The notes: generated by a model from the sequence alone, not told the origin. A stretch of DNA of 64,000 nt from Trichosphaerium sp. ATCC 40318 (GCA_038496445.1 JALMLS010000210.1:62001-126000); one strand, 5' to 3'. Counted from the stretch's first letter, positions 23,943 to 28,703 are shown. Translations and numbers: made by a program.

Positions 23943-25013
23943 TTAACAATACAAGGCACTATTCCAGCATCCATACTCTTCTGTATTTGTGTTCCATATT
24001 TTTTCACCTGACTCGTGCTTAAACTGCAATAGAATCCACGATTTTGGTTTTTTAGTGTCCACAGGTAATAAAATACCAGGTATGCCATCTCTAGTCGTAC
24101 TTTGAAAAGTCCCGTAAAACTTAAAACTTTTCGTTTTGTCTGCCTTGATTTTAGTGGACTCCTCCTTTGAGCCCGCTTTATCGTGTATGTTTATTACGTG
24201 ATGTGTACAATGAAAGGTCACGTGAGGCCCTTCCATTGTGCACGTGCCTTTGTGAACTACATCAGTGTAGCTTTCGGTACCATAGTAACTATAATCGTTC
24301 TTGTAGACATACTCAAAAGTGTACTTATTTTTCGTTATTTTGAAAGTGAGTCTGTAAGAAAATTTATCTTCTCCGTACTTTAAAGGTTTGACAATAACTT
24401 TAAAGTACGTACCAATACGGTCTACAGTAGGAGGTAGAAATTCACCAATGTAGCGTATAAGTTCAAAAGGAAGAGTTGCAAGTGTAGGGCTATTCTTCCA
24501 AGCAAGGATCAACCAAATTCTATATTTAGAGCAACAATCATTGTCTACTTTTGGACGATGCATAGCACGCGAAATGGATATCCAAGACTCATTTTTAGCC
24601 AATTTGCCAGGTATAGAATCATGTTGAAGTGAGTGAATAAGTGCATCATGTTGTAGAACGAGGGATTCGAGCACGCGGAGTTCAGGTGTTGTGATTTTGA
24701 GGTTTAAGCCTTCTATCAAGGTTGTTGGTGTAATTTTGTCGTCTATATAGTAGTGGCTGCCCGAATTAGGTCGTTTAACGAGTTTAACGCAATTTTTATC
24801 ATCTTTTGTTGTACGAACGAAAAGAAGGCCATAATTCGCGTTTCCGAATTGTGTTATGAACATAGCGAGCCGTGTGAAGGGATTTGAGGATGACAATGCA
24901 ATTTTCAACCTAACGTAGCTGAGAAGCACGCCATTACATCCTAACTTTCCTAGCCGTTGTGAAGTCGTCAAAAACTGTTGTACACTCTGTTTTGTGGTAT
25001 CACTCCTTGACAT
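23943..25013 (-). CDS. Intronless 356-aa hypothetical protein with an internal F-box-like motif
   Basis: Long ORF containing LATLPFELIRYIGEFL. Confidence 0.7.
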   Translation of the reverse strand: MSRSDTTKQSVQQFLTTSQRLGKLGCNGVLLSYVRLKIALSSSNPFTRLAMFITQFGNANYGLLFVRTTKDDKNCVKLVKRPNSGSHYYIDDKITPTTLIEGLNLKITTPELRVLESLVLQHDALIHSLQHDSIPGKLAKNESWISISRAMHRPKVDNDCCSKYRIWLILAWKNSPTLATLPFELIRYIGEFLPPTVDRIGTYFKVIVKPLKYGEDKFSYRLTFKITKNKYTFEYVYKNDYSYYGTESYTDVVHKGTCTMEGPHVTFHCTHHVINIHDKAGSKEESTKIKADKTKSFKFYGTFQSTTRDGIPGILLPVDTKKPKSWILLQFKHESGEKIWNTNTEEYGCWNSALYC

Positions 25014-25559
25014 TTGCTGCGGTCTTTGCTGCGGTTTGAGGTGATGGAAAATACAAAACTTAACATTTTAAGTTGTTTACTGAATTACACAGAACGCACA
25101 TCAGTTAGCAAAATGCGACTAGAACGCTAAAGTACTCCACCTTTCCTGTATGTACCATGCAACAGCATACGTTACTATTCTCTGATTACATTTTCTCATG
25201 GTTACTGATAGTCTGTTGGCATTAATATGTATTCTCTGAAAAATTGTGTACCAACCTTTTTCCTACAACTAAGGCCACGTCTCTTACACGTATTCTCATC
25301 TTTCGTGTGCCCTTTAACGTTTCACTGTACATTGTCACCGAAAATACGACAGCACGTGCGCCAAAGGGACGAAAAGAAAACAACTATGTTGGAAATACAC
25401 AGAGCTATTATGGCCAAGTTCAGTTTTTGGTCCGTGATACATCGTGTAGACTATGTAAGCCACTCACAGAGTCTCATGAAGTCATAAAGAAACCTTGTTT
25501 CAATGAAAGCAAGCGAAGCACTTCTTCTTGAGGTTTGAACATACTCCAACACTCTTACC

Positions 25560-26928
25560 ATGGCAGAGTCTAAGAGCATCCTGGGCTCTATTTCTTCTTT
25601 TGACAGGTCAAAACTCTCTCGTACGACAACGAAAGTAACTAGAGGCGCTCTTGGAGCTGGTAATAACGAATTCAAGCGTAAGAGTGTATAATGGTAGCTT
25701 ATAGACGATCAAGACTTTAAAGATGATAAAACAGAGTATTTCGACACTCCCTCTGAGTTCTATACAAAGGTAAGCCCAACACTATCGTAATTGTCCAACG
25801 CAGACTCAGATAAGACGACTGGCTCAACTGATACGCGATTCCAATTACACAGTGTATTTTACAGGTGCTGGGATTAGCACAGCAGCAGATTTGCCTGGTA
25901 CACGACACTCTTAGCTTTTTTAATTCCACTTTGCTTTGCTGGTTTTTTTCTTCTTGTGAAGTGTTGTGCTTGGTGTTGTATTAAAATTTGGTAGACTACC
26001 GAAGTCCTCAAGGTGTATGGACACTGAAAGAGAAAGATAAAATGATTAAGCCTCACATAGATATTAAAAATGCAATACCAACAGCACGTGATTGTTGATT
26101 TAATTTTTTTTGTTTCAAAAGCCTTAATGGGCTTTTTTAGACAGCGCATATGGCCTTGGTTGGTCTTGAAAAAGCGGGTAAATGTCAAGCAGTAGTAACT
26201 ACAAATCTTGATGCATTGCACGTGAAAAGTGGGTTAGCAAAGGCAAATGTTTTTGAACTACATGGAAGTCGCTTGAAAGGTTATTAGACGCACACTAATT
26301 GCTCTCACTTCTAAACAACAATATGTATAGTTGCTTCAGCTGTTGGTTTTGGCTGGGATCTACCAAAAGAAGAGTTTGATGGAGCTAAAAGTCACTCATC
26401 AAAGGCTGATTTGGCAATTGTCTTAGGTTTCTTAAGTTTTTCTTATATCAAACTGCTGCTCGTTTCACTGACCATGTTTAGGGTCAAGTATGCGCGTTAA
26501 ACCAGCTTGTGAATTACCTCAGCTATGTTATAAAAAGACAAGTGGAACTGGAAAGTTAGTAATCGTTAATCTCCAAAAAACACCTTTTGATTCAGATGCT
26601 CACTTAATAATTCGTGTAAGCCAAACACTCTATTTGTTTGTTTCTCATGCTTCGTTTTTACTTATAACATATAAAAAAGGGTGAACTAGATGACGTGATG
26701 GTGCACTTGATGAAGGAACTGCATATACAGATCCCTGAGATGACAGTTGATGGCATAAAAATACCTCGGAAAGAAGTACCAGATATTGCTTTAAAGTATT
26801 CAAACAGAACGACTCGTCAAAACGTTACAACGAAGAGAGCCATACATAATTTTATTCAAAAATTTGGTGACGCTGAGTCAGAATCAGATTCAGAGTCAGA
26901 TAGCAACCAAGATGACTTTGAAGATTAA
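25560..26928 (+). CDS. Class IV (SIRT6/7-like) sirtuin with WH2/beta-thymosin-like N-terminus and no Zn module
   Basis: Spliced motifs DKTEYFD, FTGAGISTA, DYRSPQGVWT, HMAL, TTNLDALH, ELHG, ADLAIVLGSSMRV and LVIVNLQKTPFD. Confidence 0.88.
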
Positions 26929-27167: not shown

Positions 27168-28703
27168 ATTACTGGGGTAAACCTCTAGCATACTTTACTT
27201 CTAAGCTGTTATCTATGTTGTTTGCAGGAACTCTAAATCTAGCTCTAGCACCCCTCCTACAGTAGTAAAACTTAGCAACAATAAGGCAAGCTCAATGATG
27301 GTTTGAACTATACGTACTTTTTTGAAGCACCCAAGTCTTTGAGTAGTGAATCTACATTAAAATCACCTTCTTTAGGTGATTTTTGCCAAGCATATTGCTG
27401 TGCAGGACTATTCGCTATTTTCTTAGCTGCTTCTCTTTGTGCTTTAATTTTTTCAAGTTTCTTATATTTTTCTGCATTAGCTGCCATACGTTCTCTTTCT
27501 TGTTTATACTTTTCAACATGCTGGGCTCGAAGTTCATTTTTTCTTTTCTCAAGATGTCTAACTCTCCTTGCTTCTTGTTCTTGTATCTGTCTCCTGAATT
27601 GTTCTCTTTCAGCTTCAGAATACATGACTTCTTTTTTCTCTTCAACATTGTTCTGTTGACTTGAAACACTCTGTTGTTGTCGTCTTTGTTGCTGTTTTTG
27701 AGGAGGCCTGCTAAACCTATCAACTGTCTCTATAGCTACTATACGAGAAGGTTGCCTTGGATTTTGGTTTTGTTGTGCCTTAGATGGCATGGAGGCCCGA
27801 TTTAGTATTCTTTGTTTAAGTCTTTGTTCAGCTGCAGTTATATCTGCAATAATATTATTCTCCTCAATCTCTCTATCACGTTTCTGTTTCATTACTCTCT
27901 CTTCTCGAGCTAGTCTCTCTTGTTTTAGACGTTCTAGATGCTCTCTTTTCTGCCTTGCAAGCCTATCCTTCTCTATCTGTGCCTTTCTATCTATTTCTCG
28001 TTGTTTTTTCTTCTCTTGTTGTCTTTTGATGTCAGCTATACGGTACTGCTCTGCAAGAGCTTGTTGCCTTGCAAACTCATCTTGTTGATACTTTTCTTGT
28101 TCTTGACGTATAGCATCAAGCCTTTCTTTAGCAGCCTGTTGACTTAGCTGAAAGCCTGAGATTCTCTCAGCTTGTTTTTGAGATTTTGGAGTTGTTCTGG
28201 CTTCTGGCTCACGCACGCTCACGGTACGCGTTGCTCCTCGCTTTTGTTGCGAGTAATTAGCGCTAGGAACTCGCGAAGATGTGCTGCTACCTTGTAAAAC
28301 TCTATCTATGTAGCTATCGAATTCTTCTTTAGTTTCCATGCGCTGGGAGGGAGCTCTAGCTACTGGAGTGTCATAAAACGTGTTTGACTCGAGTAGTAGA
28401 TCTAGCTCCCCGTCTAGCTCGGAGAGTATTGCGTGCGAGGTAGACGGACCTTTTACACGCGTTAGAACGGCTTTTGGTGTAAAATGCGTAACTGGGCTCC
28501 GTGTTTGGCTTGTCGTTCTCAAGATCATCTACTAAGCCATCCAACTCGTTTCGAAACTGTGAAAACCGACCAGGCGCTTTTCTACTTTCGGTACTTTGCA
28601 GCTGATAGTCCTAAACGCCTATTTAGACTCGAAATTCGCGTTTTAAGCTGTTTATTTCAAACTAGCGCACATTTCCGACGCTAAGTGTACCAACATCATC
28701 CAT
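27168..28703 (-). CDS. Coiled-coil/low-complexity protein with LD-like motifs; ends approximate
   Basis: Main ORF 27308-28528 plus inferred 5' exons (NELDGLVDDLE) and a 3' exon; long E/R/K/Q helix. Confidence 0.7.

What the first reader, a model, noticed from the sequence alone, without database searches (positions are those of the whole stretch)
25560..26928. Sirtuin lacking the whole zinc-binding module and carrying a WH2/beta-thymosin-like N-terminus
Seen: the spliced product reads ELHGSRLK|VASAVGFGWDLP. The 51-nt intron (26280-26330) has an in-frame stop and no CxxC, so the Cys4 module between ELHG and FG..LP is absent. The usual TQN(V/I)D motif reads TTNLD. The N-terminus SILGSISSFDRSKLSRTTTKV resembles beta-thymosin EIEKFDKSKLKKTET. 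Known: canonical deacylase sirtuins need the Zn module, and some Zn-less SIR2 domains are NADases. Inference: an actin-associated sirtuin with altered chemistry.
Basis: partly seen in the sequence, partly recalled or inferred. Interest (0 to 1): 0.7.

Follow-up and report, generated by a model that had tools for sequence, protein, structure and literature searches.

The report
Zinc-less sirtuin with thymosin-like actin motif
An amoeba-type protist transcribes and splices a SIRT6/7-class sirtuin that has cleanly lost its four-cysteine zinc module yet keeps its NAD active site, and that starts with a beta-thymosin/WH2-type motif shared by a wide, barely described protist family often fused to the actin-binding CAP-C domain, so it probably works on the actin monomer pool (untested).

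Summary
All four observations hold. The gene (25560-26928, +) has eight exons and encodes 319 aa. cDNA contigs of a public run confirm every splice joint, including 26279|26331, so the mRNA reads ELHGSRLK|VASAVGFGWDLP. About 44 residues, holding all four zinc cysteines, are missing compared with human SIRT6.

The loss is genomic and old. A 48%-identical paralogue in the same genome lacks the module inside a single exon, and so does an Arcella intermedia relative. They were the only cases among 242 database relatives with complete cores.

TTN in place of TQN is general in this clade and is not linked to zinc loss.

The N-terminal motif is real at family level:
- A profile of 25 motifs hits only beta-thymosins and ciboulot in the PDB (E 4.5e-10).
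- One relative passes Pfam's Thymosin threshold.
- A profile built without this genome finds only exon 1 in the six-frame window (E 4.4e-8).
- Many relatives carry CAP_C on either side.

"Actin-associated" is therefore well supported by inference. "Altered chemistry" is untested, and the active site is intact.

CAP-C-sirtuin fusions are already published as SIR8. I found no paper on the thymosin motif or the zinc loss. The scan had already noted the paralogue on other DNA.

One caveat: the other strain's cDNA has a frameshift in exon 1.

The parts
25537..25559 (+). 5' UTR; mRNA 5' end at 25537
   Evidence: The X2 contig ends here and runs on into a 22-nt template-switch (SMART-type) oligo (table 7).
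25560..25659 (+). Exon 1 (start codon; aa 1-33 plus 1 base)
   Evidence: ORF and model; joined to exon 2 in the X2 contig.
25575..25649 (+). Beta-thymosin/WH2-like motif (aa 6-30, SILGSISSFDRSKLSRTTTKV...)
   Evidence: Family HMM built without this genome: E 4.4e-8 in the six-frame window, aa 6-30. The family profile hits only thymosins in the PDB.
25705..25769 (+). Exon 2 (linker; EYFDTPSEF)
   Evidence: cDNA joints.
25810..25897 (+). Exon 3 (GAGIS NAD-binding motif); corresponds to SIRT7 90-118 and SIRT6 36-62
   Evidence: The cDNA joint uses the distal AG; PDB phmmer.
25995..26083 (+). Exon 4 (DYRSPQGVWT ...)
   Evidence: cDNA joints.
26084..26140 (+). Intron 4, GC..AG type
   Evidence: X2 joint 26083>26141, ends GC..AG.
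26141..26279 (+). Exon 5: TTNLD (26198-26212) and catalytic ELHG (26255-26266)
   Evidence: Pfam SIR2 E 9.2e-7; SIRT6 residues 94-135.
26280..26330 (+). Intron 5 (51 nt), at the place where the Cys4 zinc module is missing
   Evidence: Stops in all frames and no CxxC; spliced out in the X2 cDNA.
26331..26426 (+). Exon 6 (VASAVGFGWDLP...; the FGxxLP strand)
   Evidence: cDNA; alignment to the family.
26482..26615 (+). Exon 7 (GSSMRVKPA, VNLQKTPFD); corresponds to SIRT6 216-253
   Evidence: PDB phmmer; cDNA.
26680..26928 (+). Exon 8 (end of the core, then a 65-aa acidic tail with no CAP_C; stop at 26926-26928)
   Evidence: cDNA of X2 and X1; Pfam finds nothing.

Best explanation
The gene encodes a 319-aa class IV (SIRT6/7-type) sirtuin of a protist subfamily that carries a beta-thymosin/WH2-type motif about 75 residues before the GAGIS NAD-binding loop. 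It belongs to a small branch (this gene, a paralogue in the same genome and an Arcella gene) that has deleted the whole Cys4 zinc ribbon between the catalytic ELHG strand and the FGxxLP strand. A 9-10-residue link replaces the ribbon.

Shown: the gene is transcribed and correctly spliced; it is under purifying selection; the Rossmann core with all NAD and catalytic residues is kept; and a zinc-less relative is predicted to fold like SIRT6.

Inferred: the N-terminal motif docks on monomeric actin, as thymosin beta-4 and ciboulot do. A disordered linker of about 30 residues then lets the NAD-dependent active site act on actin or on proteins bound to it. The most likely reaction is removal of an acyl group from lysine; mono-ADP-ribosylation is the alternative. 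SIRT6's zinc domain is its nucleosome acidic-patch anchor, so loss of the module fits an enzyme that no longer works on chromatin. Most motif-bearing relatives keep the zinc module, however, so its loss is a later reduction and not a requirement of the actin role.
For: Splicing and 5' end.

Class IV identity: exon-wise Pfam and PDB matches. For the paralogue exon, SIRT6 87-136 and 188-272 are separated by 7 residues instead of 51.

Selection: 6 synonymous against 3 non-synonymous differences from the X2 strain in exons 2-8, pN/pS 0.14, P 0.005.

Conserved columns kept.

Zinc-less relatives: the L002 paralogue, where the gap lies inside one exon, and Arcella P0151. They were the only such cases among 242 database cores. 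Monophyly of the three is not rejected, and the constrained tree is better by 33.6 lnL, p-AU 0.87. All three sit in one clade with SH-aLRT 95.

Fold: AF2 of Arcella residues 1-262 gives pLDDT 89, pTM 0.82, with residues 22-34 disordered. The best Foldseek matches are human SIRT6, E 1e-23, TM 0.78.

Motif: the profile hits only thymosin beta-4, beta-9 and ciboulot in the PDB, E 4.5e-10 to 0.013. 13 of 25 members hit Pfam Thymosin. P0168 scores 25.6 bits against a cut-off of 24.8. Exon 1 is found by a profile built without this genome. The spacing to GAGIS is fixed.

CAP_C fusions occur on either side of the sirtuin.

Literature: the SIRT6 zinc domain binds the nucleosome acidic patch (PMC10104460). 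CAP holds lysine-acetylated G-actin, and the deacetylase for it is unidentified (PMC11589041).
Against: No biochemical evidence exists for actin binding or for any catalytic activity.

The window's exon 1 alone reaches no Pfam Thymosin or WH2 hit, and its LKKT position reads LSRT.

In the X2 strain, exon 1 carries two 1-base deletions and three substitutions. These would stop the ORF after about 27 codons and break the motif.

The zinc module is considered necessary for deacetylation by canonical sirtuins (PMC12700824), so the enzyme could be inactive or could do something else.

The window gene has a long branch (0.93-1.4 against a median of 0.44-0.7) and has replaced three conserved glycines.

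AF2 gives the first 20 residues of the Arcella protein pLDDT 77-81, so an intramolecular role for the motif is not excluded.
Confidence: 0.55

Rival explanations
1. The gene is a decaying paralogue. It is a duplicate of a thymosin-motif sirtuin that lost its zinc module, is drifting towards a pseudogene, and is transcribed only as a leftover.
For: It has a long terminal branch. Gly-to-Ser, Gly-to-Asp and Gly-to-Ala changes fall at conserved positions. The X2 allele has a frameshift in exon 1. The genome holds many other sirtuin genes.
Against: The 319-codon ORF is intact across eight exons, and all joints are spliced in frame. pN/pS is 0.14. All catalytic and NAD residues are kept. The zinc-less state is shared with a slowly evolving paralogue (branch 0.38-0.4) and with an Arcella gene, so it has been maintained for a long time.
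Confidence: 0.15
2. The protein is a zinc-less NAD-consuming enzyme or a pseudoenzyme. It still binds actin through the motif, but without the zinc module it cannot deacylate. It acts instead as an NADase or mono-ADP-ribosyltransferase, or only as an NAD-sensing actin-binding protein.
For: Canonical sirtuins need the zinc module for deacetylation, while the zinc-less SIR2 proteins ThsA and FAM118 process NAD (PMC12700824). SIRT6-class enzymes are annotated in databases as mono-ADP-ribosyltransferases (source names). Q of TQN is replaced by T.
Against: The protein is not related to the SIR2_2/ThsA type: its Pfam match is SIR2 PF02146 and its nearest fold is SIRT6. The strands that hold the substrate peptide (FGxxLP, VxPA) and the catalytic His are kept. 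T for Q is also found in zinc-bearing relatives.
Confidence: 0.2
3. The N-terminal motif is not an actin binder. It is an element of the sirtuin itself (packing on the core, or binding another partner), and its likeness to thymosin is convergent.
For: The motif is short, with only F and L invariant. AF2 gives it moderate confidence in a single-chain model. An earlier scan note on a sister gene judged the motif unsupported (s1-372517). The paralogue's second copy lacks the basic LKK position.
Against: The profile finds nothing but thymosin/ciboulot chains among 177,635 PDB sequences, and no SIRT6 chain, although full-length SIRT6 is in the bank. Repeated independent fusion of the same sirtuins to CAP_C, a G-actin-binding domain, occurs on either side. 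The motif occurs in tandem in the paralogue, as in multi-repeat thymosins.
Confidence: 0.1

Closest known systems
Human SIRT6 (and SIRT7), class IV sirtuins
   Same: The best sequence and fold matches are to these enzymes. GAGIS, the N and D of the xxNxD motif, catalytic ELHG, FGxxLP, GxSxxVxP and NLQxT are all kept. There is no large helical subdomain.
   Different: The whole Cys4 zinc ribbon (SIRT6 about 137-187, including the acidic-patch anchor loop 167-176) is replaced by about 10 residues. The motif reads TTN, not SQN. There is an extra N-terminal thymosin-like motif, and the SIRT6 C-terminal domain is absent.
SIR8 of sponges and cnidarians (Gold & Sinclair 2022, PMC9486876)
   Same: SIR8 is a class IV sirtuin fused to the actin-related CAP-C domain. 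The Amphimedon protein (P0267) has a partial copy of the motif (KDKLKHAETVEK) 69 aa before GAGIS. Relatives of the window gene have the same CAP_C-motif-Sir2 order.
   Different: The window gene has no CAP_C and no zinc module. The amoeboid clade reads xTN, not SQN. In my tree the Amphimedon protein falls outside that clade. The paper mentions neither thymosin, nor zinc loss, nor amoebae.
Beta-thymosin / WH2 motifs (thymosin beta-4, beta-9, ciboulot)
   Same: The spacing is the same: hydrophobic L/I..I..F, then D/N-K/R-x-x-L-(K)-x-T-x-T. These are the only PDB hits of the family profile, and all of them except thymosin beta-9 come from entries made to study actin binding.
   Different: The motif is part of an enzyme, not a free peptide. 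There is no equivalent of the C-terminal helix of thymosin beta-4. The window copy has S-R where thymosin has K-K, and it is below Pfam's threshold on its own.
Zinc-less SIR2 NADases (ThsA, FAM118A/B; Pfam SIR2_2)
   Same: They have a sirtuin fold without a zinc-binding module (PMC12700824).
   Different: They are a different branch with a seven-stranded sheet, a helical small domain and filament formation. The window protein is a secondarily reduced SIRT6-type enzyme.

Membership tests
Class IV sirtuin (SIRT6/7 type) | Match to Pfam SIR2 (PF02146), with best solved relatives SIRT6/SIRT7 | tested here: met
   Exon 5 scores 29.4 bits against a cut-off of 24. SIRT6 or SIRT7 is top for exons 3 and 5; exon 7's best PDB match is bacterial Sir2Tm, with SIRT6 only weak (E 0.19-0.26). 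The fold of the zinc-less relative matches SIRT6.
Class IV sirtuin (SIRT6/7 type) | Catalytic His and NAD-binding motifs (GAGIS, N and D of xxNxD, GxS, NLQxT) | tested here: met
   All are present in the window protein when it is added to the 74-sequence alignment.
Class IV sirtuin (SIRT6/7 type) | Cys4 zinc ribbon between the ELHG and FGE strands | tested here: not met
   The four Cys columns are 99-100% conserved in relatives and are gaps here. The cDNA confirms the joint.
Class IV sirtuin (SIRT6/7 type) | Gln of the (T/S)QN(V/I)D motif | tested here: not met
   The window reads TTNLD. 128 of 205 collected relatives also have T at this position.
Beta-thymosin / WH2 actin-monomer-binding motif | Score over the Pfam gathering threshold (Thymosin PF01290 or WH2 PF02205) | tested here: not met
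   Window exon 1 gives no hit up to E 10. The relative P0168 passes (25.6 bits against 24.8) and 13 of 25 family motifs hit at E<=1.
Beta-thymosin / WH2 actin-monomer-binding motif | Profile-level similarity to solved thymosin/WH2 chains | tested here: met
   The family profile that includes the window copy scores E 4.5e-10 to 0.013 for six thymosin/ciboulot sequences; the only other row at E<=10 is an unrelated chain at E 0.76. Exon 1 fits the family profile at E 4.4e-8.
Beta-thymosin / WH2 actin-monomer-binding motif | Binding of G-actin | not testable with these tools
   This needs biochemistry.
SIR8 (Gold & Sinclair 2022) | CAP-C domain upstream of the Sir2 domain (present in about half of SIR8) | tested here: not met
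   No CAP_C is found in any exon. 23 bases separate the mRNA 5' end from the ATG.
SIR8 (Gold & Sinclair 2022) | Grouping with animal SIR8 in a class IV tree | tested here: inconclusive
   Amphimedon P0267 lies outside the 49-row clade that holds the window gene, but the deep branches are weak (SH-aLRT 88-90, quick tree).
SIR8 (Gold & Sinclair 2022) | The nine-residue SIR8-specific motif | not testable with these tools
   The motif is shown only in a supplementary figure whose image is not held.
Zinc-less NADase sirtuins (SIR2_2: ThsA, FAM118) | SIR2_2-type fold and sequence | tested here: not met
   The only Pfam family hit is SIR2 PF02146, and the 36 best fold matches are SIRT6.

The most novel reading that the evidence does not exclude
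A naturally minimal sirtuin, consisting of the Rossmann core only with no zinc ribbon, stays catalytically active. It is delivered to monomeric actin by a built-in thymosin/WH2 motif and acts as a dedicated actin lysine deacylase (or ADP-ribosyltransferase) of amoeboid cells. The wider motif-plus-CAP_C sirtuin family, including animal SIR8, would then be an ancient actin-modifying enzyme system.
Probability: 0.3. Interest if true: 0.8.

Novelty: new variant of a known kind. Interest (0 to 1): 0.6.

Why it matters
Textbook sirtuins are held to need their zinc module. Here a SIRT6-type enzyme has lost it cleanly and has been kept under selection in at least two paralogues and one other amoeba. 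That offers a natural test of what the module is for.

The thymosin-type motif, together with CAP_C fusions in relatives from Amoebozoa, Naegleria, Thecamonas and a sponge, points to a sirtuin family aimed at the actin monomer pool. CAP is known to hold lysine-acetylated G-actin, and the deacetylase for it has not been identified.

The distribution also suggests that the published 'SIR8' architecture may be far older than animals. In my tree, however, the amoeboid clade did not group with the sponge SIR8.

Tried and rejected
- **Single-exon Pfam scans.** Apart from exon 5, they gave nothing.
- **PDB phmmer on short pieces.** Exon 6 and the L016 N-terminus alone gave nothing. Only the profile worked.
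- **Thymosin in the own genome.** Pfam Thymosin over the whole genome found only three sub-threshold sites unrelated to these genes.
- **CAP_C next to a sirtuin in this genome.** I looked at seven CAP_C loci with flanks of about 1.5 kb and found none. An earlier scan note says such a gene exists elsewhere in the genome.
- **Zinc loss by skipping of the 96-nt exon.** In the zinc-bearing paralogue L016 this exon encodes the second Cys pair. Its introns are phase 2 and the window intron is phase 1 (my count), so the idea is not supported.
- **Membership in SIR8.** The result was inconclusive.
- **First tree.** It split the three zinc-less genes, but the constrained search found a better tree.
- **The second AU test** (window gene plus paralogue only) did not finish in time.
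- I used coordinates instead.
- **The joined 319-aa model.** It was never sent to a search, fold or look-up tool. Those tools got exons by reference or database proteins. The joined model was built only inside local scripts from the stored window, for alignment, trees and HMM scoring.
- **Sequences for trees.** L015 and L017 entered the first tree as concatenated tblastn pieces, not exact models. L009 and L010 dropped out of the core extraction and were not in any tree.

Full report
**1. The gene and its splicing**

The window is eukaryotic DNA with short introns. Earlier notes of the scan call the organism amoeba-like. The genome is 70 Mb in 642 contigs. From the sequence I built a splice model and then corrected it with public reads.

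Run X2 holds an 825-nt contig that lies on exons 2-8 and skips seven... more exactly six introns after exon 2, plus a 175-nt contig that joins exon 1 to exon 2 and runs on, at 25537, into a 22-nt template-switch oligo. That marks a cDNA 5' end. Run X1 confirms the last joint.

The final exons are 25560-25659, 25705-25769, 25810-25897, 25995-26083, 26141-26279, 26331-26426, 26482-26615 and 26680-26928, giving 319 codons. Intron 4 is GC..AG, and intron 2 uses the second of two AGs six bases apart.

The joint that matters, 26279|26331, is in the cDNA. The 51-nt intron has stops in every frame and no CxxC. The gene is single-copy in the assembly.

**2. The missing zinc module**

The joined protein was not sent to any search, fold or look-up tool. 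It was built only in local scripts from the stored window.

- Exon 5 matches Pfam SIR2 and human SIRT6 residues 94-135, ending at ELHGN.
- Exon 3 matches SIRT7 90-118 and SIRT6 36-62.
- Exon 7 matches SIRT6 216-253.
- Exon 6, 32 residues long, therefore stands where SIRT6 has 77. The four zinc cysteines and the loop between them are gone.

When the model is added to a 74-sequence class IV alignment, every column conserved in at least 85% of sequences is kept, with few exceptions. The exceptions are three Gly, one Asn, the four Cys and one Leu of the deleted piece.

**3. The loss is genomic, shared and maintained**

A tblastn of the model against the other SIR2 loci of the genome found a paralogue, L002 on contig C232. 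It is 48% identical and encodes 280 aa. Its ELHGS-LKKGYTIA-FGQELP lies inside one 150-codon exon. Against SIRT6, 7 residues replace 51. No splicing error can explain that.

The large representative search with that exon was needed because the word search cannot take a short exon. Among the 150 best hits it returned one full-length protein with a single unbroken match, plus three short fragments that begin after the catalytic His. That protein is from Arcella intermedia (UniRef100_A0A6B2L456; the full transcript P0151 has 482 aa) and reads ELHGTAHDQASVVNFGQEIP.

Of 242 database relatives with complete cores, only this Arcella gene is zinc-less.

In trees of the catalytic core, the window gene, L002 and the Arcella gene fall in one 12-row clade (SH-aLRT 95). 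The clade also holds zinc-bearing proteins of Balamuthia, Pyxidicula, Acytostelium and metagenomes. Holding the three zinc-less genes together gives a tree 33.6 log-likelihood units better than the quick free search, with p-AU 0.87. A single loss is therefore allowed and even favoured, but not proven.

Against the X2 strain, exons 2-8 differ by 6 synonymous and 3 non-synonymous changes, giving pN/pS 0.14 and binomial P 0.005.

AlphaFold2 of the Arcella protein residues 1-262, with a family alignment, gives pLDDT 89.2 and pTM 0.82. Its 36 best Foldseek matches are all human SIRT6, at E about 1e-23 and TM 0.78. The core is thus predicted to fold without the module.

**4. TTN for TQN**

This substitution is not special to the zinc-less genes. 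128 of 205 collected relatives have T in place of Q, as STN or TTN, and nearly all of them have the four cysteines.

**5. The N-terminal motif**

On its own, window exon 1 hits nothing in Pfam. The picture changes with relatives.

*Copies in this genome and in relatives:*
- The paralogue L002 begins with two tandem copies, MLDSIKSFNKGELKETGK and LLGSIRGFNRKELAEQDK.
- A third paralogue, L016 on C21, keeps its zinc module and sits in another subclade. It begins MSILAGITNFDKSNLSKTTT, almost the window's sequence.
- Arcella begins MLKALEGFDRSKLKPTVTEV.

*Single-sequence Pfam results:*
- The only Pfam hit of the L016 and Arcella N-termini is Thymosin, at E 0.04-0.05.
- The only hit of the L002 N-terminus is WH2, at E 0.026.
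- The relative P0168 passes Pfam's Thymosin threshold with 25.6 bits against 24.8.

*Profile results:*
- I aligned 25 copies (A1). F and L are invariant and I nearly so.
- The profile of that alignment, searched against all 177,635 distinct PDB sequences, returns seven rows. Six are thymosin beta-4 constructs, thymosin beta-9 and ciboulot (E 4.5e-10 to 0.013). The seventh is noise at E 0.76. No SIRT6 chain appears.
- 13 of the 25 copies hit Pfam Thymosin singly.
- A profile of the 21 copies from other organisms, run without filters on the six-frame translation of the whole window, finds exon 1 at E 4.4e-8. Nothing else scores below 1.7.
- Across 253 collected proteins, 46 carry the motif. It lies at a median of 75 residues before GAGIS, whether it is N-terminal or internal.

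**6. Fusion to CAP_C**

The Arcella zinc-less protein ends in a CAP_C domain (PF08603, 24.6 bits against 23.8).

Among the listed relatives, 15 of 120 in one search and more in another have CAP_C. Two orders occur:
- CAP_C, then the motif, then Sir2 (P0168, P0158, P0011, P0181).
- The motif, then Sir2, then CAP_C (P0027 of Flabellula, P0025, P0190, Arcella).

Named sources include Arcella, Pyxidicula, Flabellula, Amoeba proteus, Rhizamoeba, Balamuthia, Pelomyxa, Mastigella, Naegleria, Thecamonas and the sponge Amphimedon.

CAP_C is the G-actin-binding domain of cyclase-associated protein. CAP holds lysine-acetylated G-actin, and the deacetylase for it is not identified (PMC11589041).

The window gene itself has no CAP_C.

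**7. What is known already**

Gold and Sinclair (2022, PMC9486876) named a class IV family SIR8 in sponges and cnidarians. About half of its members have CAP-C upstream of Sir2, and the authors noted CAP-C's role in actin binding. They mention neither thymosin, nor zinc, nor amoebae, and they date the family to the origin of animals.

The Amphimedon protein (P0267) has a partial motif at the same distance from GAGIS, but it reads SQN and falls outside the xTN clade in my tree. Membership of the window gene in SIR8 therefore stays open.

Four full-text searches found no paper on a sirtuin with a thymosin or WH2 motif, or on a zinc-less class IV sirtuin.

Two further papers bear on the zinc module. 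The SIRT6 zinc domain docks on the nucleosome acidic patch through R175 (PMC10104460). The module is held to be required for canonical deacetylation, while the zinc-less ThsA and FAM118 process NAD (PMC12700824).

The scan had already noted the paralogue (s1-404301), a motif-Sir2-CAP_C gene (s1-372517) and other zinc-less sirtuins in this genome. They contradict the second note's verdict that the motif is unsupported.

**8. Reading**

*Shown:* this is an expressed, spliced, selectively constrained SIRT6-type gene without the zinc ribbon, with an intact NAD site and an N-terminal element that belongs to a thymosin-like family motif.

*Inferred:* the motif tethers the enzyme to G-actin. The reaction is most likely lysine deacylation of actin or of an actin-bound protein.

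Zinc loss is a later reduction within a family that mostly keeps the module, so it is not explained by the actin role alone.

**9. Open problem**

The X2 contig for exon 1 differs from the window by three substitutions and two single-base deletions, at 25618 and 25621. Read from the ATG, that allele stops after about 27 codons. This may be a contig error, a fresh lesion in that strain, or another start site.

Noticed in passing
window 26084-26140: A GC..AG intron, confirmed by cDNA. All the other six introns of the gene are GT..AG and 40-97 nt long.
   Followed up: yes
window 25796-25809: Two acceptor AGs lie six bases apart (ending at 25803 and 25809). The cDNA contig uses the distal one, which removes two codons from my first model.
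   Followed up: yes
window 25578-25621: The cDNA of the other strain (run X2) has three substitutions and two 1-base deletions within exon 1. These would end the ORF early and break the thymosin-like motif. Exons 2-8 of the same run look constrained.
   Followed up: partly
L016:1525-2900 (G000:C21): A third paralogue of about 316 aa has nearly the same N-terminal motif as the window gene but a complete zinc module (CETC ... CDKKDC) and no CAP_C.
   Followed up: partly
L002:1136-2082 (G000:C232): A zinc-less paralogue of 280 aa has two tandem thymosin-like motifs and only two introns. The scan had already noted it (s1-404301).
   Followed up: yes
database relatives: Class IV sirtuins of amoeboid protists are fused to many other domains: zf-UBP (PF02148) very often, YEATS (PF03366; P0195, P0036) and Kelch repeats (P0251, P0276).
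   Followed up: no
P0267 (Amphimedon, published SIR8 type), aa 242-258: The sponge CAP_C-sirtuin has a partial thymosin-like piece (KDKLKHAETVEK) 69 aa before GAGIS. The SIR8 paper does not mention it.
   Followed up: partly
window 23943-25013 (-) and 27308-28528 (-): Both neighbours are long intron-less ORFs (356 aa and 406 aa; the second is rich in E, K, R and Q) with no Pfam match.
   Followed up: partly
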